Of a DNA stretch of 64,000 nt, positions 25,168 through 38,879 are shown piece by piece. The notes beneath the pieces are model-generated. The model did not search any database, was not told the origin of the DNA, and was given only the letters and a program-made list of their open reading frames with translations. The position numbers and the translations under genes are program-made. Numbering within the stretch: position 1 is the stretch's first letter; each line of letters opens with the position of its first letter. Source of the DNA: Calcarisporiella thermophila CBS 279.70. Lineage: Eukaryota > Fungi > Calcarisporiellomycota. The stretch spans positions 322,092 through 386,091 of the forward strand of contig NW_027192209.1 of assembly GCF_041956535.1 (NCBI RefSeq), in the 5' to 3' direction.

Positions 25168-26447
25168 ATGCCGGAATATACTCCCATTTTAGCAGTATAC
25201 GTTTTCCTGCAATTCCTTTCAATTGCCCTTATGTTGTTTCTCCTTGTCATTCTCTTTCGTCACAGAACTTCGCTTACCCTTGTTGGCCTCTGTATGTCCG
25301 CAGTGATTCTCAGCATTACAGAGCTGCTTACTGTTCTGCCATTCGGTAGTGGTGTCCGTAATATGGGTGGCCGGCCACTCTGTATTGCTCAAGCTTACCT
25401 TGAAGATTTTGCACATAATGCCGCGTCTTTCTGGGCGCTTTGCCTGGCCTTTAACCTGTGGGTTGTAGTGGGGAGGAGACTGAAAAAGACAGAGCGACAA
25501 ATGTGGCCTTTTTATGCGCTCTTTTCTTGGGGAATGCCCATTATTCTCGAAATAGTAGCATTTGCCATGTCAGCCCGCAAACCTTCAGCTGGAACATTCG
25601 GGGGACCCGCGTTCTGTGTCGTTGGCGACTCAGTCAGAGTGCCAACCGTGATGCTCCCTTCATCGGTGTCAACGGGGATCGGGTTAGCACTTGCTGGTAC
25701 TTATTTCAAAAATGTTATGAGCATTCAGGATTTTGATTTCGAGGTCTAATCCCCAACCCTTTTTAGTATGGTGCACGATAACCGTAGTTCGTCGTCGACG
25801 ATTTTTTACCAAATCTTCATCGCGCTCAAACGGAGGGGATTCTGGACAAAGTGGCAAAACGCGATTAAAGAAAAGGTATTCGACGACACCGTTGGAGCTT
25901 CATTCGTAGAAGCTGAATTGAATGTTTTTTTTTTGTACAGCTTATGCATTCGAATGCTAACCTTCTGCATTGTGTATGGGCTTGTCAGTACACTCGCTAA
26001 TAGTATGATTTCATCCTGCTCTCTTTGTTGATAGTATCCCATCAAATTCTAATTTCTTTCCTTACTTTGGCAGTCGATAAACTCTCCAACTGGGTTGCAG
26101 ATCCGTCCCGCGATATGGTTCAGTCAAAAGATCCAGGACTTGACGAGTTTTCTGGAACTTTGGTCGGGACAGGCCTTTTTATCATCTTTGGAACAACAAC
26201 CGAAGCTCTCCAAATGGTCTTTCCGTGCTATAAAGGTGGTAGTCTCTTCCGAGCGAAACGCAATGAACAATACAGTGACATCGAGATGCGTTCGCCAACT
26301 GCCACTCAGTTTTCACTCAGTTCCGTTGTAAAACCGCACAACAACACGGTGGAATCCTTCTCCATGCACCCCTTAAATAGTCAGCCAACTATGCATGAGG
26401 AGTTCGAATTCAGAGCAGGAGAGCATGGGAAGAGCTACAACTTGTAA
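25168..26447 (+). CDS. Putative 7-TM GPCR-like protein (cAMP-receptor/Frizzled-like), 4 exons
   Basis: About seven hydrophobic segments; 'LCIAQAYL...AASFWALCLAFNLW', 'YALFSWGMP' and the extracellular Cys in 'FCVV'; GT-AG introns reconstruct an open frame. Confidence 0.7.
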
Positions 26448-26586: not shown

Positions 26587-27185
26587 TTATCTTTCGGAAT
26601 ATCCATTTTTTACCTCGAGAGTTTATTCGATAGCATTGTGCTTTATTTTTTCTTTGGATAATGTATATATTTATATCATCTTTGCGTTTGGGGAAATTCG
26701 TTGGAGTGGGATTCATCCACGAAGTTAAAAGTGTGTAACAAACAAATGAGATAAGTAGGATGGGTTTGGGCTGCCATGGCACAGATAACGTGAAAGAGAA
26801 AGGGGGATCTGTATTAATTTAGGACTGCAGTCTATTTGACCCTAAGTTTTGGTCGGTGGAACTCGGGGATGCAGATATTTGGCCAAAACACCTATTTGAA
26901 GATAGGAGTGGATAAGAAATCGCAGCAAAATATATCAAGTGATTGTGGTTTGGATAGCCTACCAGTTTATCTGACACAAATCCTCGGGATTTTTGATAAG
27001 AACATACACGCCTACCAAAAATGGGTTCCATCTCTAGATAATGAATTCAATAGCGATATATTTAAATGAAAGCTTACTTTGATAGCTGTTTCCCTTTTGA
27101 TTTTCTCCTCCTTTTTAGTAATCCTCCCTCCTCTCTATTACTTTGCTTGGACATATCTCTTTTTGCTTTGGTGTGCTTATGATAA
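26587..27185. promoter_or_regulatory. Cluster of HGATAR (GATA-factor, AreA/NIT2-type) sites upstream of nitrite reductase
   Basis: HGATAR on either strand at about 26587, 26628, 26749, 26783, 26900, 26967, 26994, 27036, 27080 and 27180. Confidence 0.6.
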
Positions 27186-27186
27186 T

Positions 27187-30100
27187 ATGCCTCCGAACGT
27201 GCTTCATTTTGACGAGATAGTGGACCATAGCGCCCCCACTAGAACCGTGGTAGTGGTGGGCCTTGGGATGGTAGGGCTTAGATTCATTGAGAAGCTGCTC
27301 GAGCTTGACTCGGAAAGAAAATGGTATATTCACGTGTTCTGTGAAGAGCCCAGAGGTAATGCGGATTATCTGTCAATGAGGTTGACAAAAAAAAAAAAAG
27401 TTGATTTTGCTTGTATTCTAGTGGCATACAACCGCGTTGGCCTCACACAATACTTCGCTCATAGAGATGCTGGACGTCTATTGATGCAGCCGCCCGAGTG
27501 GTACGCCAACAATCGCATCCAACTGCACGTGAACACACGAGCAACACGCTTGAACTCCGTCGAGAAGTGGATCGAAAGTGCCGACGGCCGACAAGTGAAC
27601 TACGATATTTGTGTGCTTGCGACGGGTTCTACCCCCCTTCTCCCTCCGAATATGCTCGGCCTCGACGGCAAAGGCGTGTTTATATACCGAACAATCGAAG
27701 ATCTAGATAGTATTATCGCTTATTCGTCGCAGTGTAAGTCTGCCGCGGTAGTGGGCGGCGGCCTGTTAGGCTTAGAGGCTGCTAAGGCTGCAAAAGATCT
27801 AGGGATGGAGGTGACGGTATGTGAAAGATCGACGCGGCTTATGAATCGGCAGCTGGATGAGGAGGGTGCCGAAGTTTTACTCTCCGAGATCAAGAAGATG
27901 GGAATTAATACTCGTCTGGGCGAATCACCGATGGAAATCCTCCTTGATGAGGAGGGGCGGTGTCGTGGGTTGAAATATGACAAGAGTGAAAATCTCAATG
28001 TGGATATGGTCATTTTCTCAATTGGGATCATTCCTCGAGACGATTTCGCCAAGGCATCAGGAATTCAGTGCCATCCACGGGGCGGCGTTCTCGTTGATGA
28101 TTCTCTCAAGACGAGTGTTGACTCGGTATTTGCTGTGGGCGAATGTGTCGTGTATAATAACATGGTTTATGGGTTGGTGGCTCCGGGGTATGAAATGGCA
28201 GAGATTGTAGCGCGAAATCTCACTGGAGGAACCAGCCTCTTCAAGGGAGCAGATATGTCGACTAAGCTGAAGCTACTGGGAGTCCATGTGGCTAGCTTTG
28301 GAGATATTAATGATAGCAATGCGCGACCGCTTGTATACCGGGACCCATTTGCCGGAGTGTATAAAAAATACTTTTTCAACGAGGGGGGAACGAAGATACT
28401 TGGTGGAATAATGGTCGGGGACACGAAAGACTACGCGAAGCTACATTCGTTTTGCACATCGAACCGACGCCTTCCTTGTCCACCGGGAGAACTTATCTTA
28501 GGGTCAGCGGGGCAAGCGGGAGGTGGGGATGGAGTCGAAGAGCTTCCCGATGAAGTTCAAATCTGCTCATGTAACAACGTGACAAAGGGATGCATCCGCC
28601 AAGCTGTCCGGGATGGATGCCGCTCAGTTGGCGAAGTGAAGTCCTGCACCAAGGCTGGCACGGGGTGTGGTGGATGCTTGCCGCAAGTGACGGAAATAGT
28701 GGGGTGCCAGCTCAAGTCGATGGGGGAAACCGTGAAAAATTCCTTATGCCCGCATTTTGATTATTCACGCGTGGAAGTGTTCCAAATCGTCAAGGTAAAG
28801 AAGCTGAAGACATTTAGGGAGGTCATGGAACATGCTGGAAAGAATGGCAGAGCTTTCGGTTGTGAGGTGTGTAAGCCCACCATCGCATCCATCCTCGCCT
28901 CCTTGTGGAACGACCACATCCTCGAGAAGGATCACACCCCACTACAAGACAGCAACGATAGATTTCTTGCCAATATTCAACGCGGGGGCACCTATTCCGT
29001 TGTCCCACGTGTGCCGGGAGGCGAGATCACCCCCGAAAAACTCTTGGTCATCGGAGATATTGCCAAGGAGTATGGGCTCTATACCAAAATTACAGGAGGG
29101 CAGCGAATCGATATGTTCGGCGCCCGGAGAGAGGATTTGCCCAATATCTGGGAGAAGCTGGTCGATGCGGGCTTTGAATCGGGCCATGCATATGGAAAAG
29201 CTCTGCGTACAGTTAAAAGCTGTGTGGGCTCGACTTGGTGTCGATACGGAGTCCGGGATTCGGTATGATATTCAAAATGACAATCCGGTTTATTGATCCT
29301 CCCTTTTCTTATGATCACCTCCTACTGAATAGGTTGGATTTGCGATCATGATTGAAAATCGCTACAAGGGAATCAGAGCCCCGCATAAGATTAAAGGAGC
29401 CGTTTCCGGGTGCATACGAGAGTGTGCGGAGGCCCAGGGCAAAGATTTTGGTTTAATAGCCACGGATAAAGGCTACAATATCTATGTGTGTGGAAATGGT
29501 GGCTCGAAACCCAAGCATGCCCTCCTCCTTGCCGCCGATGTACCCGAAGAAAAATGCATCCGATACCTCGATCGGTTCATTGCATTTTACATCGCCACTG
29601 CCGATCGGTTGCAGCGGACCGCACGCTGGCTTGAAAAATTGGAGGGAGGAATCGAACAGCTTCGCCGAGTGATTATTGATGACCACCTTGGAATTGCTGA
29701 GGAGCTAGAGCGACAGATGCAGTATTTGATTACCACGTATCAAGACGAGTGGGCCACTGTAGTGAAAGACCCTATTAAGCGTGCCCGCTTCAAACAATTT
29801 GTGAATACAGAAGAAAGTCAACCTGGTATCGATGTGATCCAAGAGCGTGGCCAGCAACGACCTGCAGATTGGCCAAAGGAAATAGACAGGGTCGATATCG
29901 GTCTTGAACAGGATACGATTGGAAACGGAGCTCTGCAGAAACGACTGGCTCAAGATAGATCGTGGGTACCCGTTGGAAAGGCCGGTGCTTTTATACGCGA
30001 TGTGGGAGAAGTCATTAAACACGGGCGGAGTCAAATTGCCGTTTTTCGCACCTCTGATGATAAATGGTTTGCAACTCAAAATGTAACCTAATCTAATACC

Positions 30101-30515
30101 TAGTTTTCGCTTGATGGAATAGCCAACTGACAGCCCAATTGTTTATCTGTAGATGTGCCCTCACAAACGAGCATTCGTTCTCTCACAAGGAATTTTGGGC
30201 GATCACGAGGAGAATGGAAATGCGACTCCATACGTCTCCTGTCCTATGCACAAAAAGAATTTCTCGCTTAAATCTGGGAATTGTCTAACGGGAGAAGACT
30301 ACAAACTTCTCACTTTTGATGTACGGGTAGGGGAGTCTCCCTCCGACGCCACAAACGAGGATGCTATCGTTTATGTACATTTACCCCCTCCCGAGATTCT
30401 TGACAGTGTGTTGGCCACCGAGAAACTTATGGTTAAGAAAGAAGAAGCGAGCTCCATCAGTATCGAAAGTGTGGGTGGGTGCGGAGGATGTGGGGATAAA
30501 GCTTTGGAGTGGTAA
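27187..30515 (+). CDS. niiA: Assimilatory NAD(P)H nitrite reductase (NirB plus C-terminal Rieske NirD-like domain)
   Basis: VVGLGMVG (FAD), GGGLLGLEAA (NAD), BFD-like CSCNNV...CGGC, RTVKSCVGSTWCRYG, GAVSGCIRECAEAQ (siroheme/4Fe-4S), Rieske CPHK...CPMHK; introns 27356-27421, 29262-29332 and about 30083-30152. Confidence 0.96.
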
Positions 30516-31047: not shown

Positions 31048-33565
31048 CTAGTTGAAGTTGGTGGTTCCCTCATCCCAACCATTTGTGGAGTGAGGGAATT
31101 CCTTTTCGTCAACAACAATATTTGCAAATGGGTCGGCGCTGTTTAGGTCACCGAATCCGTCTGCACGTTTGCTCAGGTTCGCCTTCGGTTCATCGTTGAA
31201 CTTGGCCCTAATTTCACCAGTGAAATCGGTCTGTCCCTCATCAAAACGTTCAGTACTTGGGCGGAATTGATCCTCATCGATGACGATGTCGGCGAAGGGG
31301 TCGTCGCTGTTGAGATCATCGAACTCCTCTTGTCCAAATTCCCCGTTTCCAGCCAGCGGGTCAAAACTACCCTGCGCAAGCTGACGCTTGAATTGAGTGG
31401 TTCCCTCGTCGAAACCTCCTCGGCTGGATCGGAACTCGTTCTCGTCGACGACCACATCGGCGAATGGGTCGTCGCTATTGAGATCATCAAACTCTTGCTG
31501 ATTGTCTTGGGNNNNNNNNNNNNNNNNNNNNNNNNNNNNNNNNNNNNNNNNNNNNNNNNNNNNNNNNNNNNNNNNNNNNNNNNNNNNNNNNNNNNNNNNN
31601 NNNNNNNNNNNNNNNNNNNNNNNNNNNNNNNNNNNNNNNNNNNNNNNNNNNNNNNNNNNNNNNNNNNNNNNNNNNNNNNNNNNNNNNNNNNNNNNNNNNN
31701 NNNNNNNNNNNNNNNNNNNNNNNNNNNNNNNNNNNNNNNNNNNNNNNNNNNNNNNNNNNNNNNNNNNNNNNNNNNNNNNNNNNNNNNNNNNNNNNNNNNN
31801 NNNNNNNNNNNNNNNNNNNNNNNNNNNNNNNNNNNNNNNNNNNNNNNNNNNNNNNNNNNNNNNNNNNNNNNNNNNNNNNNNNNNNNNNNNNNNNNNNNNN
31901 NNNNNNNNNNNNNNNNNNNNNNNNNNNNNNNNNNNNNNNNNNNNNNNNNNNNNNNNNNNNNNNNNNNNNNNNNNNNNNNNNNNNNNNNNNNNNNNNNNNN
32001 NNNNNNNNNNNNNNNNNNNNNNNNNNNNNNNNNNNNNNNNNNNNNNNNNNNNNNNNNNNNNNNNNNNNNNNNNNNNNNNNNNNNNNNNNNNNNNNNNNNN
32101 NNNNNNNNNNNNNNNNNNNNNNNNNNNNNNNNNNNNNNNNNNNNNNNNNNNNNNNNNNNNNNNNNNNNNNNNNNNNNNNNNNNNNNNNNNNNNNNNNNNN
32201 NNNNNNNNNNNNNNNNNNNNNNNNNNNNNNNNNNNNNNNNNNNNNNNNNNNNNNNNNNNNNNNNNNNNNNNNNNNNNNNNNNNNNNNNNNNNNNNNNNNA
32301 GCGAGCTGGCGCTTGAACTGAGTGGTTCCCTCGTCGAAACCTCCTCGACTGGATCGGAATTCATTCTCGTCTATAACAACGTCTGCGAATGGGTCATCAC
32401 TGTTAAGATCGTCGAATTCCTGCTGACCATTCTCCGCGACCTGGCGTTTAAAATGAGTCGTTCCTTCGTCCCAGCCGTTGGTGCTGTGAGGGAATTTCTT
32501 CTCATCCACAACGATGTTAGCGAACGGATTAACGCTGTTCAGGTCGCTGAATCCGCTTAGAGCGCGCTTTGTAGGAGCATCCTTCTTAGCAGAGGTGCTC
32601 TCTGCTTGCGAGGACTGCTGCTGCGAGTCTTGTGCTTGCTGCTGTTGCTTTTGCTGTTGTTGTTGCTGCTGTTGCTGCTGTTGCTTTTGTTTCAAAGCCT
32701 CCTGAACCTGCTTCAAGCGCTGAATCGCTTTATTTCCCTTTTTTTTCGTCCCCTTAGCCTTCTTACCCTTTTTACCCTTTCCTCCCTTGTTTCCTTTACC
32801 ACCTCCGGCTCCATTCTGCCCACCTTGCTGGCCGGTCTGATCAACTTGTCCATTTTGACCCTGTTGACCGGTCTTTTCCACCTGCCCATTCTGACCTTGT
32901 TGGCTCTTCTGCTGCTCAACCTGTCCATTCTGGCCCTGCTGGCCGGTCTTTTCCACCTGCCCATTCTGACCTTGTTGGCTCTTCTGCTGCTCAACCTGTC
33001 CGTTCTGACCTTGCTGCTCTACTCTACCGTTCTGCTCGACTTGAGTCCTCTCACCGTTCTGTTGCTCTTGTTGTCCATTACGTCCATTGACCTGAATACC
33101 ATTATTTTCCTGACCATTGTTCCCTACTCCATTTCGCCCATTCTGATTATTATTGTTACGGCCTCTGTCATCATTGCGACCACGGTTGTTGCTGTTGCCC
33201 TGGCCACGATCCAGATCGACCTGGCAACGCTCGAGATTATTGAAGACGTCGTCGAGCTGCTTCTCAATATTGTCTTGCTGAGCCTTGAAGAGATCGAGGG
33301 CGCGGTTAACGTCGTTGGCGCGACCAGTGCCACCTAGGCGGCGGAATTCAGCGGCCTGGAGGTTGAACATGGCATCCATTTTCTCCCGCATCTGGTTCCG
33401 GAGCGCCTGAGCGCGGGAGCCACCGTTGGCAGCGTTATTGATGCCGCTAGGCGCTTGTGAAGAGCTGGACTCTACAACAAAGTCATCACCTTGCCCACGC
33501 CGGATCGGGCTGGCAAGTGCCGCCGACGCCACGACAAGTAGAGCTAGAAAACTTAAGGATTTCAT
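31048..33565 (-). CDS. Secreted Kex2-processed repeat protein (KEP-type peptide precursor), interrupted by an assembly gap
   Basis: Signal peptide MKSLSFLALLVVASAALA, Q/G/N-rich and K-rich blocks, polyQ, then at least 5 KR-delimited repeats FxDLNSxxPFAxxVxDExxFxxSxxxF/WDEGxTxF on both sides of the N run; stop at 31048-31050. Confidence 0.85.
31512..32299. other. Assembly gap (788 N) inside the peptide-repeat array
   Basis: N run flanked on both sides by near-identical repeat DNA. Confidence 0.99.
32830..33030 (-). repeat. Coding tandem repeat, 75-nt unit (QQGQNGQVEQQKSQQGQNGQVEKTG) x2 plus degenerate copies
   Basis: Near-identical duplicated DNA beginning 'ccggtcttttccacctgcccattctgaccttgttggctcttctgctgctcaacctgtcc'. 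Confidence 0.9.
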
Positions 33566-34853
33566 GGCAGTATGCAGTTGAGAGAGGTGTGAAATGAAAC
33601 GGCGACCAATGCAATGAGAGAATATATATGCAATTGAAGGAATGTACTATGCAAAGAAATGAAGAGCTGATATACAATGTTTCCCAAGAGAGTTCTGCTT
33701 GCCCAAATTCGATAATGAACTACTTCAAAGGGGGAGGAATGGGGGGGCGAGCGGCGTCGGCTTATTTTTATATATTCCCCTCATCTTTCCACCTGTTCAC
33801 CCCGTTTCCCACTGAGTGACAACCTAATTTCATGTCGGATCCATGTTTGTATGGATCTTCCAGCTCGTTTGTGACCACTCGACCCCTATCCCGGCGGAGT
33901 GACTGCGATTGCAGAAAGTGCACGGTGGGGATGAGGAATAGTGGCCGAGGGCTCAGGAAAAAGATCCACTTGAGAGAGGAGAATGAAATGGGTCTGAGAA
34001 AAAGAGGGTTAAGCGCAGCAGCTCATTTTCTAGAATGAGCAGGCCTAACAGGGCCAAGGAAAGCAGAGGCCTCGCACAACCCACGCTGTTCTCCTTAGCT
34101 CACTACCCTTGCCTTGCCACCGGATTGGACGATCATCCTCTCGCGAGCGCATCAAAGGGGAGCCAAATGAGCTCATCCATTGAAATTGCGCCTTGCCACG
34201 AGGTTCTTTTCTTCTTTCTGCTCTCAAACCCGTCGCACTAGGAAGAGTGCCTTGCGCAGCCCAACCCAATCACTCGCCGAAATTCAGGAGATGGCCGTGA
34301 TTATCGTTTGTGGGATCAGAACTCCCGATTACATAAAATCCGATTTTCTATGTACAGGAGCACCACGCTATCCCGTTTTGCGAATTGAGCGGAGGGCGAT
34401 TCGTCATCCCCTGCTCCTCCATGGCACCTTGCTTGTGACCCATACCAGGCTACGACCCGCTGTGAACTTGGTTTTAGTCATTGAAGTAACGTTACATGGT
34501 TGCGCAGCCTCGTCTCCCTGAAACCCGAGTGTACTGTACAGGTCCATGGCTCGCACCGCTGCGCTCTCCCTCGCAACGCTTCTAGCCCTCGATTGCAAGG
34601 AGAAATCCGGCGTGTTGGCCCTTATCACTTGGGCCTTCCCCGGCTATCGAAGACTCTCGAATGGGCTCACGTCCATCCCGCTTCCCTAATTTGTCCGCCT
34701 GCAACACCGATATGTGGATGGTTCCACCGCGTTACTAACCACTTATTCTATTGGCACATGTGAAAGCTTCAGGGACAGGAAATTGCCCGAACCTGTTCAT
34801 CTCCACTCGCCTTAATCTTCTCCTCCTAATAGGGAGCCTTCCCCCACTTCATA

Positions 34854-35537
34854 ATGAAGGAAGCCGCCCTGTTCGCGCCACTTGAAGATGCACTCCTCTA
34901 CAGCTACAAGCCGGAGGAAAAGGACATTGCCATCCCTGTTCGCGAGATTCTCGCGAAGCCAGCAGTAGCGCTAATCATTCGCCGTCCAGGATGCTGGCTC
35001 TGTCGGATCCAGGCTGTTGCGTTGAAAAGGCACCGCGAATTTCTCGAGAAGAAGCTGGGCATCCGATGTTTCGCTGTGGTACATGAGCAATTGGGTGCGG
35101 AGGAATTCAATAATGGCTTCTGGAATGGCGAGCTTTACTGGGACAAATCGCGAGCGTTCTACAAGTCGCTCGGGGAGGGCGAGATCCGCGTTGCCTCCTT
35201 GTGGAATCTCTTCACTCTACAGACCTATGCCAGCATGTTCAAGGCGCTCTCCAGCGGCATTTCCGGTAATTTGCTCGTTGGAAATGGCCTAATATATGGA
35301 GGTGCCGTTGTGATTCAAGACAAACATTTTCTCTTCGTGCACAAAGAGAAAGGTTTTGGCGATCTGGTTAAGATCTCTGAGGTTTTAAAAGCCTGCAAAC
35401 AGATCGCGGGATCCAGTGCGAATAATGAGGTGATGAGCGAGCTCGATCAGCGTATTGCTGACGAGCTCCGAAAAGAGGGCCAGAATCCACCTGACGCGTT
35501 AGCTTGTAAACCTCCCGATCGTCCCTCCAAGCTGTAG
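34854..35537 (+). CDS. Peroxiredoxin-like 2A / AhpC-TSA_2 (FAM213/SelenoU-family, Cys form) with PTS1
   Basis: IIRRPGCWLCR (CxxC), VVHEQLG, FWNGELYWD, HKEKGFGD; intronless; ends in -SKL. Confidence 0.88.
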   Translation: MKEAALFAPLEDALLYSYKPEEKDIAIPVREILAKPAVALIIRRPGCWLCRIQAVALKRHREFLEKKLGIRCFAVVHEQLGAEEFNNGFWNGELYWDKSRAFYKSLGEGEIRVASLWNLFTLQTYASMFKALSSGISGNLLVGNGLIYGGAVVIQDKHFLFVHKEKGFGDLVKISEVLKACKQIAGSSANNEVMSELDQRIADELRKEGQNPPDALACKPPDRPSKL

Positions 35538-35950: not shown

Positions 35951-38879
35951 CTAAGGGTTGGCATTCCGGAGAGCTTGCAGAGCAGTTGCCACGCTCACCG
36001 ATTTGCGAATGCGATGGGCCAGTTGGCGTATTTCGGCGCGCTTCCTCTCCGCAGCCTTTCGCTCCGCAAGCTTCCTCTTTCTTTCCTTGGTAGGCCACAG
36101 CATGACGGTGCGCTCAAACGACCACCACCTATATGGAAAACAATATATCATGCCCACGGATCAACCTCTGAAATACAACTGGGACAAGCTCTCCACCCAC
36201 TTACCTCAACATGGCCACTTTAACCGCATCCAAGACGAACATATACGCAAGGGAGATTGCCATGATGGTGATGCCCCACGCCCATCCGATGGGGGCGTTC
36301 CTTTCTGCCTCGCCGAACGCCCCGTAAATGGACATGAACATGGCAAAGACCTGAGTGGCCAGGATCACTACCGTGAAAATGATCGACGGTAAATTCGTCC
36401 AGATGAAGCCGGGGATACGCGTCGAGAAAATCAGGAAGTGGGGGCACGAGGATATGTGCAGGTACATGATCGTATTGAGCTCAAAGTCCGTGACATGGAA
36501 ATAATCGCGTGCCGTGTAGAAAAAGGCGAAGGAGGCCGCGGAGAGGAACAGCGCAAGGACAAAGGACATGCACAAGAGCTGGCCGAGCCGCCATTTATCC
36601 GGACGATTGGATATCTGGGCGTTGTCCCAGGCAATCACGATGGTGGCCGCATCGTTCAGCACCGCGATCAAGATCAGCAGCAGCGGCGCCATCTCCCATT
36701 GCTCGATCAACGTGATCAAGAAGAAAAAGATGAGGAAGTGGATGGTGGAGGTGATACGGTAGAGAGAATAGGAGCGCATCCGCTGGAAGATGGCTCGCGA
36801 GGTTTTGATCCCATCCACGATGGTGGAGAGGCCGGGGGCAAGGAGCACAATATCCGAGGCAGAGCGGGCCGCGTCGGTGCACCCATGCACCGCAATGCCA
36901 ACATTGGCCTTCTTCAGCGCCGGCGCATCGTTCACCCCATCCCCCGTCATGCCCACCAGCAACCCCTTTTTCTGCAACAGCTCCACCACGCGGTATTTAT
37001 GCTCGGGGATCACCTGGGCAAACCCATCCGCACGCACACAGTGCTCCGTCACCTCCTCCTCTGATTTCTCGGGATCCACGAGATGGCCGGCATCCAGAAT
37101 GACGCGCTGCATGCCGAGGCGATGGGCGACCTCTTTTGCAATGATGAGCTGATCCCCCGTGACCATTTTCACATTCACCCCCATCCCCTCGCACTCGGCA
37201 ATCGTGTGGGCCGAATCGGGGCGGGGCGGGTCCAAGAGGGATATCATTCCAACGAGCTGGAAGGTCTCGACATCGCCCGGAAGCGTGCGGGCCACGCCTA
37301 GAGCGCGCAGGCCCCGCCGGGCAAGGGCATTCACCGCCCTTACCGCGTCATCGTCGCCGCCCACCAATTTAACAATGACTTGGGGCGCGCCCTTGGCCAC
37401 CCTGAACAAGCTCTGGGACTCGAGGTTCAACACCTTGGCTTGCGTCATCTTCGTGACCGAGTTGAAGGGAAGAAAAGAGGTCACCTTGTACCCGGGCACC
37501 ACGGTTTTACTCTCGCGATTCTTCAGGATCTCGAGCTTCTCCTCCGCTGCACGCCGCACCGCAACCTCAATGGGATCGTTGGCGCCCGGCTCGGCGGCGA
37601 GGTACGCATACAGCAGCAGGTCCTCCTCGGTGAACCCCTTGCTGAGGTAGGGCTTATCGAAGGTGAGCTCGTTGAGGGTCAGCGTGCCGGTCTTATCGGA
37701 GCAGAGCACCGATACCGAGGCCAGCTCCTCCACCGCGGTCAGCCGTTTCACGATGACCTGCTTGCGCGCCAGTTGCTTCGCCCCAAACGCCATGGTGACG
37801 GACATGACGGTGGGCAGCCCCACCGGGATGGCGGCGATGGTCAGCACGAGGATCTTCTTGATCGAGTCCAGCGGGTCGCGAGCCTGGGTGATGCCCAACA
37901 GGTAGCCGAGGAGGACGAGCACCATGATGACGGTGATGAGGATGAGGAAGTTTCCGATCCGGTTGATGATTTTTTGGAAGTGCCCTTCCTCCGTGGTGAT
38001 CGAGATGAGGTTGGCGGCCCGGCCGATGAAGGTGTGGGCGCCGGTCTTGGTGACCACGGCCATCTGTTGGCCCTGCTTGACGACCGACGAGGAGTACACC
38101 GTGCTCCCCTTGTTCTTCGTGACGGGGAGTGATTCTCCCGTGAGGGCCGACTGGTCCACATGGAGGTCGCCCTCCGTCTCCTCCCCGTTCACCCCGATCC
38201 CAAGCAGCCGAGCGTCGGCGGGGATGATATCCCCCAGCCGCAAAACAATGATGTCGCCGGGCACCAGCTCCGCCGCATCCACTTCCGTCAGTTTTCCATC
38301 GCGCCAGACCCGAGTCTTGAGGGCCAGGTTCTGCTTCAACGCGTCGAGGGCGCTCTCTGCCTTGGCCTCCTCGGCAAACCCAATGGCGGCGTTGACGAAC
38401 AGAAGGCCCACGATGATTCCGAAATCAATCCAGTCCCGGGTGACACCTGCCAGGATGCATGCGATCTCAATCAGGTAAGCGATCGCGCCCGTGAAGAAGC
38501 TGAGGAATTTGAGGATGGGGTTAGTCCGTTTCTCGACCAGCTCGTTGCGCCCGAAGTTGGCCAGCCGTTCCGCGGCCTCCTCCGACGTCAGCCCCTTGGA
38601 GGGGTCGGTGTGCAGCAACTTCTCGCGCTCCGGATCGATCTCGTCCTCGTGCTCGGTATGCTTGTGTTCCTAAAACCAGGATGGAGGTTAGTTTGACTTG
38701 AGGCTTCAGCCCAGGACCCAGGGCCGAGTCGGTATCGCTTCTACCTCGAACTCCACCCCGCTCTTCTCCTCCTGCTTCTTTTCAGACGCATCTCCATCCG
38801 CTGCCGGCGGCTTTTCCTCCGATGCTGGGGCTGTGTTTGGCATCTCATCCCCATTTTGCATCTTTTCAGTTTCCGTCAT
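35951..38879 (-). CDS. PMA1: Plasma-membrane H+-ATPase (P-type IIIA)
   Basis: DQSALTGESLP, PVGLP, CSDKTGTLT, KGAP, DPPR, MTGDGVNDAPALKKA; introns 38670-38744 and about 36133-36204. Confidence 0.97.

What the first reader, a model, noticed from the sequence alone, without database searches (positions are those of the whole stretch)
31048..32575. Kex2-processed repeat precursor encoding a family of acidic secreted peptides (best candidate novel system)
Seen in sequence: after a signal peptide and pro-region the ORF becomes KR-delimited repeats. (1) ALSGFSDLNSVNPFANIVVDEKKFPHSTNGWDEGTTHF-KR. (2) QVAENGQQEFDDLNSDDPFADVVIDENEFRSSRGGFDEGTTQF-KR, then QLA and the gap. (3) ...QDNQQEFDDLNSDDPFADVVVDENEFRSSRGGFDEGTTQF-KR. 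(4) QLAQGSFDPLAGNGEFGQEEFDDLNSDDPFADIVIDEDQFRPSTERFDEGQTDF...LS-KR. (5) ADGFGDLNSADPFANIVVDEKEFPHSTNGWDEGTTNFN*. A core of about 34 aa (FxDLNSxxPFAxxVxDExxFxxSxxxF/WDEGxTxF) is conserved while the leaders vary, and many differences between copies are synonymous. Established: signal peptide plus KR-separated repeats is the architecture of fungal KEPs (alpha-factor, Ustilago Rep1, Candida Ece1, dikaritin precursors). Inference: this is a peptide family I do not recognise, from a probably non-Dikarya fungus, releasing multiple 38-70 aa acidic peptides. Those starting with Gln could be pyroglutamylated.
Basis: partly seen in the sequence, partly recalled or inferred. Interest (0 to 1): 0.8.

Follow-up and report, generated by a model that had tools for sequence, protein, structure and literature searches.

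The report
Orphan Kex2-type acidic peptide precursor
A gene of the thermophilic early-diverging fungus Calcarisporiella thermophila has the build of a known fungal precursor class cut at Lys-Arg sites into many secreted peptides, but its roughly 40-residue acidic peptides have no relatives in any public sequence; cleavage and function are untested.

Summary
One minus-strand gene (33565..31048) encodes a canonical signal peptide, a 315-residue non-repeat region and at least five copies of a 34-residue acidic core. Every copy is bounded by Lys-Arg or by the stop codon.

Between copies, synonymous sites are saturated while protein identity stays at 59-97%, so each unit is under strong purifying selection.

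The organism is Calcarisporiella thermophila (Mucoromycota), so "non-Dikarya" is right. Its genome has at least six kexin P-domain loci and no UstYa/DUF3328 match.

The repeat has no relatives. An exhaustive profile search of 1.84 billion proteins returned only the window's own fragment and one spurious hit. Pfam, PDB, the ESM Atlas and a metagenome scan gave nothing.

The gene meets the published working definition of a Kex2-processed repeat protein (KEP). KEPs are common in Mucoromycota (about 9 per strain), so this is a new member of a known kind.

The assembly gap could not be closed because no sequencing run was listed. As written, the two pieces are one base out of frame, which means nothing for an estimated N-run. 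About six more units would fit.

Cleavage, expression and peptide function remain inferred. The scan noted this same stretch twice more, and a different KEP-like gene elsewhere in this genome.

The parts
33763..33774 (-). TATA-like box (TATATAAAAATA), about 209 nt upstream of the ATG
   Evidence: Read by eye. There is no eukaryotic promoter tool here, and the bacterial scan is not relevant.
33512..33565 (-). Start codon and predicted signal peptide, residues 1-18 (MKSLSFLALLVVASAALA, predicted cut before SP)
   Evidence: Eleven-residue Kyte-Doolittle means are 1.8-2.7 over residues 1-11 and fall below 0.3 from residue 13. Ala at -3 and -1. SignalP was not available.
33191..33511 (-). N-terminal non-repeat region (residues 19-125); residues about 51-122 are predicted as two long helices
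   Evidence: AlphaFold2 on the single sequence gave pLDDT 66.6 with helices at model residues 33-62 and 65-104. No relatives by word search or Atlas, and no Pfam family.
32834..33205 (-). Gln/Asn/Gly-rich low-complexity region (residues 121-244), including a recent 75-nt tandem duplication at 32837-33016
   Evidence: Composition Q 28%, G 20%, N 19%. TRF period 75, 2.4 copies, 91% matches.
32564..32833 (-). Gly/Lys block, predicted coil and polyGln (residues 245-334, net charge +17), ending in the first KR (32564-32569) directly before unit 1
32444..32563 (-). Unit 1, class A (38-residue peptide plus KR); core at 32450-32551
32300..32443 (-). Unit 2, class B (43-residue peptide plus KR), then QLA, the first three residues of the next unit; core at 32315-32416
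31512..32299 (.). Assembly gap (788 N, length estimated). Room for about six further 42-45-residue units if the estimate is right.
   Evidence: It could not be closed.
31384..31509 (-). Unit 3, class B, N-terminus cut by the gap (at least 40 residues plus KR); core at 31390-31491
31165..31383 (-). Unit 4, divergent class B with a 20-residue leader and a 17-residue tail (71-residue peptide plus KR); core at 31222-31323
31048..31164 (-). Unit 5, class A (38 residues). The stop codon (31048-31050) falls one residue after the core, where the other units carry KR.

Best explanation
The gene encodes a Kex2-processed repeat protein (KEP).

Shown:
- A signal-peptide-like N-terminus.
- A 315-residue non-repeat region.
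- At least five, probably about ten, copies of a 34-residue acidic core. They fall into two classes: A at both ends of the array, B inside.
- Each unit is bounded by Lys-Arg or by the stop codon.
- Each unit is individually under strong purifying selection.
- Kexin genes are present in the same genome.

Inferred:
- The precursor enters the ER, and a Golgi kexin cuts after every KR.
- A Kex1-type carboxypeptidase trims the C-terminal KR.
- The cell then releases cysteine-free, tyrosine-free linear peptides of 38-71 residues (net charge -3 to -14, pI about 4), plus one large Gln/Asn/Gly/Lys-rich N-terminal fragment.
- N-terminal Gln of class B peptides may cyclise to pyroglutamate.

My guess at function is an extracellular or cell-wall role of the peptides as such, because the build is closest to Ustilago Rep1 (many peptides of about 40 residues plus one large fragment). 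A role in cation binding or in signalling is equally open. The function is not shown.
For: Architecture is.

KR sites:
- KR lies only at unit boundaries: 5 of 5 overall, and 4 in the repeat part against 0.41 expected, reached by 5 of 20000 shuffles.
- The KR before unit 1 sits in non-repeat sequence.
- Unit 4 has a 17-residue non-homologous tail and still ends in KR.
- The last unit ends at the stop codon where KR would be.
- So KR tracks the boundary, not a fixed position in the core.
- KR codons differ between units: AAG or AAA, CGC or CGT.

Selection: pS is 0.66-1.0 against pN 0.01-0.24. Units 2 and 3 differ by 15 synonymous and 1 non-synonymous change.

Processing enzyme: six kexin P-domain loci in the genome, with S8 plus P domain confirmed on one.

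No repeat fold: AlphaFold2 gave pLDDT 49 and pTM 0.13, with the KR regions below 50.

Other properties: no Cys, no C-terminal hydrophobic GPI-type signal, no Ser/Thr-rich stalk.

Definition: the gene meets the KEP criteria of PMC7329392, namely a signal peptide and at least 3 repeats of at least 8 residues between dibasic sites, none over 100 residues.

Precedent: KEPs are common in Mucoromycota and give larger peptides there.
Against: No peptide, transcript or cleavage product has been seen, and no RNA or DNA run was listed.

The signal peptide was judged by rule, not by SignalP.

KR is part of the repeated unit, so most of its recurrence could be inherited rather than selected.

The 315-residue non-repeat region is far longer than in most KEPs, so it may be the main product.

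The single-sequence structure prediction is weak evidence for disorder.

The gap leaves it formally open whether the two pieces are one gene.
Confidence: 0.68

Rival explanations
1. It is a secreted repeat protein that stays intact. The acidic units would be modules of one long extracellular or cell-wall protein, for example a cation-binding or matrix protein, and the KR pairs would be conserved linker residues that are not cleaved.
For: Purifying selection on each unit fits a repeat domain as well as it fits released peptides. The large non-repeat N-terminal part, with a predicted helical hairpin, suggests a multi-module protein. The strongly acidic, Asp-rich units would suit cation binding.
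Against: KR is the optimal kexin site, it lies in stretches with no confident predicted structure, and the genome has several kexins. A secretory protein would be expected to be cut there. KR follows unit boundaries through variable leaders and tails and is replaced by the stop codon in the last unit. No repeat superstructure is predicted, with pTM 0.13.
Confidence: 0.2
2. The gap hides a gene boundary. There would be two tandem paralogous genes: the first (signal peptide, long region, at least 2 units) ends in the gap, and the second starts there.
For: Continuity across the gap is untested. The public annotation holds the downstream 149-residue piece as a separate partial protein.
Against: About 790 bases is little room for a stop, an intergenic region, a promoter, a start, a signal peptide and a leader. 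The downstream piece begins in phase, inside a unit leader. The class A units at both ends of the array look like the ends of one array. Even under this reading, both genes would still be KEP-like.
Confidence: 0.08
3. It is a silent or decaying lineage-specific ORF with no function.
For: There are no relatives anywhere and no expression data.
Against: The frame is open over all 575 visible codons. Synonymous sites are saturated between units while the protein sequence is conserved, which cannot happen without long-lasting selection on the protein.
Confidence: 0.03

Closest known systems
Ustilago maydis Rep1 (repellent precursor)
   Same: Both have a signal peptide and a tandem array of KR-delimited units. 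Rep1 has 12 repeats that give 10 peptides of 34-53 residues plus one large fragment of 229 residues (PMC3133707). Here there are at least 5 units, probably about 10, that would give peptides of 38-71 residues plus one fragment of about 315 residues. The peptides lack cysteine.
   Different: There is no sequence similarity: the profile search found nothing but the gene itself. The organism is in Mucoromycota, not Basidiomycota. The peptides are strongly acidic (net -3 to -14). Amyloid formation and surface activity are untested.
Kex2-processed repeat proteins (KEPs) as surveyed by Le Marquer 2019 and Umemura 2020
   Same: It meets the working definition. Like all 357 Mucoromycota KEPs in that survey, it has no DUF3328 neighbour. 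Peptide size lies in the larger classes noted for Mucoromycota.
   Different: Calcarisporiella is not named in the main text of either survey. The core matches no catalogued or public sequence. The non-repeat region is unusually long. The public annotation keeps only a 149-residue fragment without a signal peptide, so proteome-based surveys would miss the gene.
Saccharomyces alpha-factor precursor and alpha-type pheromone-like KEPs
   Same: Signal peptide, pro-region and KR-delimited repeats.
   Different: Those peptides are 9-24 residues long, and the spacers carry X-Ala or X-Pro dipeptides for Ste13. Here the peptides are 38-71 residues with no such dipeptide signature.
Ustiloxin-type RiPP precursors (dikaritins)
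   Same: Signal peptide and KR-delimited repeated cores.
   Different: Dikaritin cores are 8-14 residues, need Tyr, and have neighbouring UstYa/DUF3328 genes. Here there is no Tyr in any unit and no UstYa match in the whole genome.
Candida albicans Ece1 (candidalysin precursor)
   Same: By my own knowledge, not tested here: a signal peptide followed by eight KR-ended peptides of about 30 residues.
   Different: No sequence similarity. Ece1 peptides are not homologous repeats of one another, and candidalysin is hydrophobic and cationic, whereas these peptides are acidic.

Membership tests
KEP (Kex2-processed repeat protein; definition of PMC7329392) | ER signal peptide | tested here: met
   Met by rule only. 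The N-terminus has Lys at position 2, a hydrophobic core from residue 4 to 17 (Kyte-Doolittle window means up to 2.7) and Ala-Leu-Ala before the predicted cut. SignalP, which the definition uses, was not available.
KEP (Kex2-processed repeat protein; definition of PMC7329392) | At least 3 tandem repeats of at least 8 residues between dibasic sites, none longer than 100 residues | tested here: met
   Five visible units of 38-71 residues, each bounded by KR or the stop codon. The criteria were read.
KEP (Kex2-processed repeat protein; definition of PMC7329392) | Kexin present in the organism | tested here: met
   Six loci with the proprotein-convertase P domain, at 76-104 bits against a cut-off of 21. 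Peptidase S8 plus P domain are on one ORF of L004.
KEP (Kex2-processed repeat protein; definition of PMC7329392) | Actual cleavage at KR and release of the peptides | not testable with these tools
   This needs peptidomics or expression in wild-type and kex2-null yeast.
Ustiloxin-type RiPP precursor (dikaritin) | UstYa/DUF3328 gene nearby | tested here: not met
   No PF11807 match anywhere in the 28-Mb genome. The tool's control genomes are prokaryotes and could not ring, so sensitivity is unproven.
Ustiloxin-type RiPP precursor (dikaritin) | Short core (8-14 residues) containing Tyr for cyclisation | tested here: not met
   The cores are 34 residues long and no unit contains Tyr. The requirement was read.
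Alpha-factor-type pheromone precursor | Peptides of 9-24 residues, with Ste13 dipeptide spacers after KR | tested here: not met
   The peptides are 38-71 residues. The leaders (ALSG, QVAENGQQE, QLAQGS..., ADG) carry no run of X-Ala or X-Pro dipeptides.
Rep1 repellent family | Sequence homology to Rep1 repeats | tested here: not met
   The exhaustive profile search returned only the gene's own fragment and one spurious bacterial-type repeat protein.
Rep1 repellent family | Peptides form amphipathic amyloid at the hyphal surface | not testable with these tools
   This needs synthetic peptides with ThT or CD assays, or staining of cell walls.

The most novel reading that the evidence does not exclude
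The acidic 38-71-residue peptides would be a previously unseen class of functional extracellular peptides of an early-diverging, thermophilic fungus. One version is Rep1-like surface or cell-wall assembly peptides that arose independently in Mucoromycota. The other is cation-binding or signalling peptides, conceivably sensed by the cAMP-receptor-like GPCR that lies 5 kb away. The array would be ancient (synonymous sites are saturated) and confined to the isolated Calcarisporiella lineage.
Probability: 0.15. Interest if true: 0.6.

Novelty: new member of a known kind. Interest (0 to 1): 0.35.

Why it matters
KEP-derived peptides are abundant in fungal genomes, but very few have been detected or given a function, and almost none in early-diverging fungi.

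This gene is a clean test case. The units are long and strongly conserved, and the two peptide classes are easy to synthesise and to look for by mass spectrometry. The fungus is culturable and thermophilic.

The gene also shows a blind spot. An assembly gap splits it, and the public proteome keeps only a fragment without a signal peptide, so secretome-based KEP catalogues cannot contain it.

Beyond that it is an ordinary member of a common class, and its function is unknown.

Tried and rejected
Closing the gap did not succeed:
- no sequencing run was listed;
- exact-protein look-ups of a neighbouring gene and of the fragment P0121 found no other assembly.

Searches for relatives were all blank or noise:
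- word search with the repeat region;
- word search with the N-terminal region;
- ESM Atlas, twice;
- Pfam, which gave only sub-threshold noise: SspK, SLT_beta, CDRT4;
- a PDB profile search, with best E = 0.45 for SMURF and ectodysplasin, which is noise;
- a metagenome contig scan, where 94 pattern matches gave none confirmed.

The second hit of the exhaustive search, P0122, is a 987-residue protein with repeated LDPFADVCVDAAPFAL units. It shares only the word DPFADV and I rejected it as a relative.

Structure prediction of the three C-terminal units gave no confident fold, so no fold search was run on it. The helical hairpin of the N-terminal region is too generic for a fold search to be informative.

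Readings considered and rejected:
- DPF and NPF as endocytic adaptor motifs, because the protein has a signal peptide.
- An EF-hand-like calcium loop, because the spacing of Asp, Asn and Glu does not fit the 12-residue loop (by eye).
- A GPI anchor, because there is no hydrophobic C-terminus.

The bacterial promoter and terminator scan is not relevant to a fungal gene.

Full report
**What is there**

The finding's coordinates (31048-32575) cover the 3' part of one minus-strand gene. That gene starts at the ATG at 33565 and ends at the stop codon at 31048-31050. An assembly gap of 788 N (31512-32299) splits it into two pieces.

The upstream piece, window:32300-33565:-, is one open frame of 422 codons. 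In order it holds:
- **Signal peptide.** MKSLSFLALLVVASAALA, then SP.
- **A region with two predicted long helices.** AlphaFold2 on the single sequence gave pLDDT 67.
- **A Gln/Asn/Gly-rich low-complexity stretch.** It contains a recent 75-nt duplication.
- **A Gly/Lys block and a polyGln run.** Together they carry net charge +17.
- **A KR, then unit 1, KR, unit 2, KR, QLA.**

The downstream piece, window:31051-31509:-, is 153 codons. It reads unit 3 (cut by the gap), KR, unit 4, KR, unit 5, stop.

A TATA-like box lies about 209 nt upstream of the ATG (by eye).

**Is the repeat real?**

Yes. The five units align over a 34-residue core without indels and with 18 invariant columns. The genome's own six-frame search recovers the internal copies at E = 5e-21 and 5e-16, and finds the repeat at no other locus of the 28-Mb assembly.

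The units fall into two classes:
- **Class A:** units 1 and 5, with ...PFANIVVDEK.FPHSTNGWDEGTT.F.
- **Class B:** units 2, 3 and 4, with EFDDLNSDDPFAD.V.DE..FR.S...FDEG.T.F.

Class A sits at both ends of the array.

The strongest result is at the DNA level. Between any two units the proportion of synonymous differences is 0.66-1.0, which is saturation. The non-synonymous proportion is 0.01-0.24.
- Units 2 and 3 are 97% identical in protein and differ by 15 synonymous and 1 non-synonymous change.
- Units 1 and 5 are 85% identical in protein and differ by 21 synonymous and 7 non-synonymous changes.

So the duplications are old, they have not been homogenised by gene conversion, and each unit has been kept by purifying selection on the protein. 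This also settles the reading frame and the strand.

**The KR sites**

KR occurs five times in the 575 visible residues, always at a unit boundary. In the repeat part there are 4 KR where composition predicts 0.41, and only 5 of 20000 shuffles reach that.

Inheritance with the unit could explain recurrence, but three details point to the boundary itself being what is kept:
- The KR before unit 1 lies in non-repeat sequence (DAPTKR, then ALSGF).
- Unit 4 carries a 20-residue leader and a 17-residue non-homologous tail, and still ends in KR.
- The last unit ends with the stop codon one residue after the core, where the others have KR.

The KR codons differ between units (AAG or AAA, CGC or CGT).

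**The gap**

I could not test continuity directly:
- No sequencing run was listed for this stretch, so no reads could be laid.
- No other assembly holds the flanking proteins.
- No metagenome contig carries the repeat.

As written, the last full codon upstream and the first full codon downstream are 790 bases apart, which is one base out of frame. The N-run length is only an estimate, so this says nothing.

The indirect evidence favours one gene:
- Both pieces are on the same strand, at the only locus with this repeat.
- The upstream piece has no stop codon.
- The downstream piece has no start codon or signal peptide.
- The upstream edge stops three residues into a leader (KR-QLA, as at the start of unit 4).
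- The downstream edge starts inside a leader (QDNQQE-F, compare QVAENGQQE-F of unit 2).

If the estimate is right, about six more units of 42-45 residues would fit, giving roughly eleven in all. That is inference. A boundary between two genes hidden in the gap remains possible, and I give it about 8%.

**Organism and processing machinery**

The neighbouring nitrite reductase exon is 100% identical to a protein of Calcarisporiella thermophila. The next best hit, from Jimgerdemannia, is only 61% identical.

The genome has six loci with the proprotein-convertase P domain. One ORF carries the end of a subtilase domain plus the P domain, so kexin-type enzymes are present. No UstYa/DUF3328 match exists in the genome.

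**Relatives**

There are none.
- Pfam gives only sub-threshold noise.
- The word search finds nothing for the repeat region or for the N-terminal region.
- The Atlas gives nothing.
- The PDB gives noise.
- An exhaustive HMMER profile search of 1.84 billion representative proteins returns two hits. P0121 is the window's own 149-residue C-terminal fragment, held by NCBI and UniRef. P0122 is an unrelated 987-residue repeat protein that shares only the word DPFADV.

The exact sequence of the upstream piece, which carries the signal peptide, is not in the protein collection. No protein carrying its two units appeared in the exhaustive search either. The public proteome thus appears to hold only a fragment without a signal peptide, which secretome-based surveys could not pick up.

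**Predicted products**

If every KR is cut and trimmed, the peptides would be 38, 43, at least 40, 71 and 38 residues long. Their net charges are -3, -10, -10, -14 and -7, with pI about 4-4.8. Each has five to eight aromatic residues and one short aliphatic cluster (IVV, VVI or IVI). None has Cys or Tyr.

There is one N-glycosylation sequon, in the tail of unit 4. There is no GPI-type C-terminus and no Ser/Thr-rich stalk.

AlphaFold2 on the three C-terminal units gives no fold (pLDDT 49, pTM 0.13), and the KR regions are among the least confident parts. That is weak evidence, because a single sequence was used, but it gives no support to a compact repeat domain.

**Comparison with what is known**

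The gene meets the working definition of a KEP used by Umemura 2020: a signal peptide, and at least three repeats of at least 8 residues between dibasic sites, none over 100 residues (PMC7329392).

That survey found 9.15 KEPs per Mucoromycota strain, none with a DUF3328 neighbour. Le Marquer 2019 noted larger peptides in Mucoromycota (PMC6339444). Neither paper's main text names Calcarisporiella.

The closest build is Ustilago Rep1: a signal peptide and 12 repeats, giving ten peptides of 34-53 residues and one 229-residue fragment, which form amyloid at the hyphal surface (PMC3133707). There is no sequence similarity to it.

The gene is not an alpha-factor type, because the peptides are too long and there is no Ste13 dipeptide signature. 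It is not a dikaritin type either, because it has no Tyr, no UstYa match and long cores.

**Verdict**

This is an orphan, lineage-restricted KEP-type precursor: a new member of a known and common kind. Cleavage, expression and function remain to be shown. Interest is moderate to low, at 0.35.

The points worth keeping are the unusually clear purifying selection on each unit, the two-class arrangement, the long non-repeat N-terminal module, and the fact that the assembly gap hides the gene from proteome-based catalogues.

First-stage readers noted this same stretch twice more. They also noted a different, Asn-rich KEP-like gene elsewhere in this genome. I did not check that second gene.

Noticed in passing
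window 27079-30515 (+): A nitrite reductase gene in at least three ORF pieces (exons). The 729-codon piece is 100% identical to a Calcarisporiella thermophila protein (VTP21DRAFT_3943), and the next best hit is 61% (Jimgerdemannia). This names the organism and shows how isolated the lineage is.
   Followed up: partly
window 25168-25749 (+): An ORF with 7tm_2 and Dicty_CAR matches (28 bits each, above the cut-offs). It is a cAMP-receptor-like GPCR exon about 5 kb from the precursor, on the far side of the nitrite reductase gene. Nothing links it to the peptides, and fungal peptide-pheromone receptors belong to other families.
   Followed up: partly
G000:C5:1110032-1112179 and G000:C7:757755-759762: Kexin P-domain loci come in two closely spaced, oppositely oriented pairs. 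Two more lie on C17 and on C19 (C19:558104-558436, with two in-frame stops or an intron). That makes six in all, many for a 28-Mb genome.
   Followed up: partly
window 32837-33016 (-): A 75-nt tandem duplication (2.4 copies, 91% matches) inside the Gln/Asn/Gly-rich region, encoding QQGQNGQVEQQKSQQGQNGQVEKTG twice. It is young, in contrast with the old acidic units.
   Followed up: no
window 31051-31497 (-), protein P0121: The public protein collection holds only the 149-residue C-terminal fragment that starts just after the gap. The exact sequence of the upstream piece with the signal peptide is not in it, and no protein carrying that piece's two units appeared in the exhaustive search.
   Followed up: partly
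window 34854-35537 (+) and 36201-38618 (-): The other neighbours are an AhpC/TSA_2 redoxin-like protein and a P-type cation ATPase (E1-E2 ATPase, hydrolase and Cation_ATPase_N domains). Neither suggests peptide modification.
   Followed up: no
same genome, another contig (first-stage notes s1-600671 and s1-593827): First-stage readers noted a different five-repeat KR-delimited precursor with Asn-rich units of about 50 residues. If real, this fungus has several unrelated KEP-type genes. It did not match the present repeat in the genome search.
   Followed up: no
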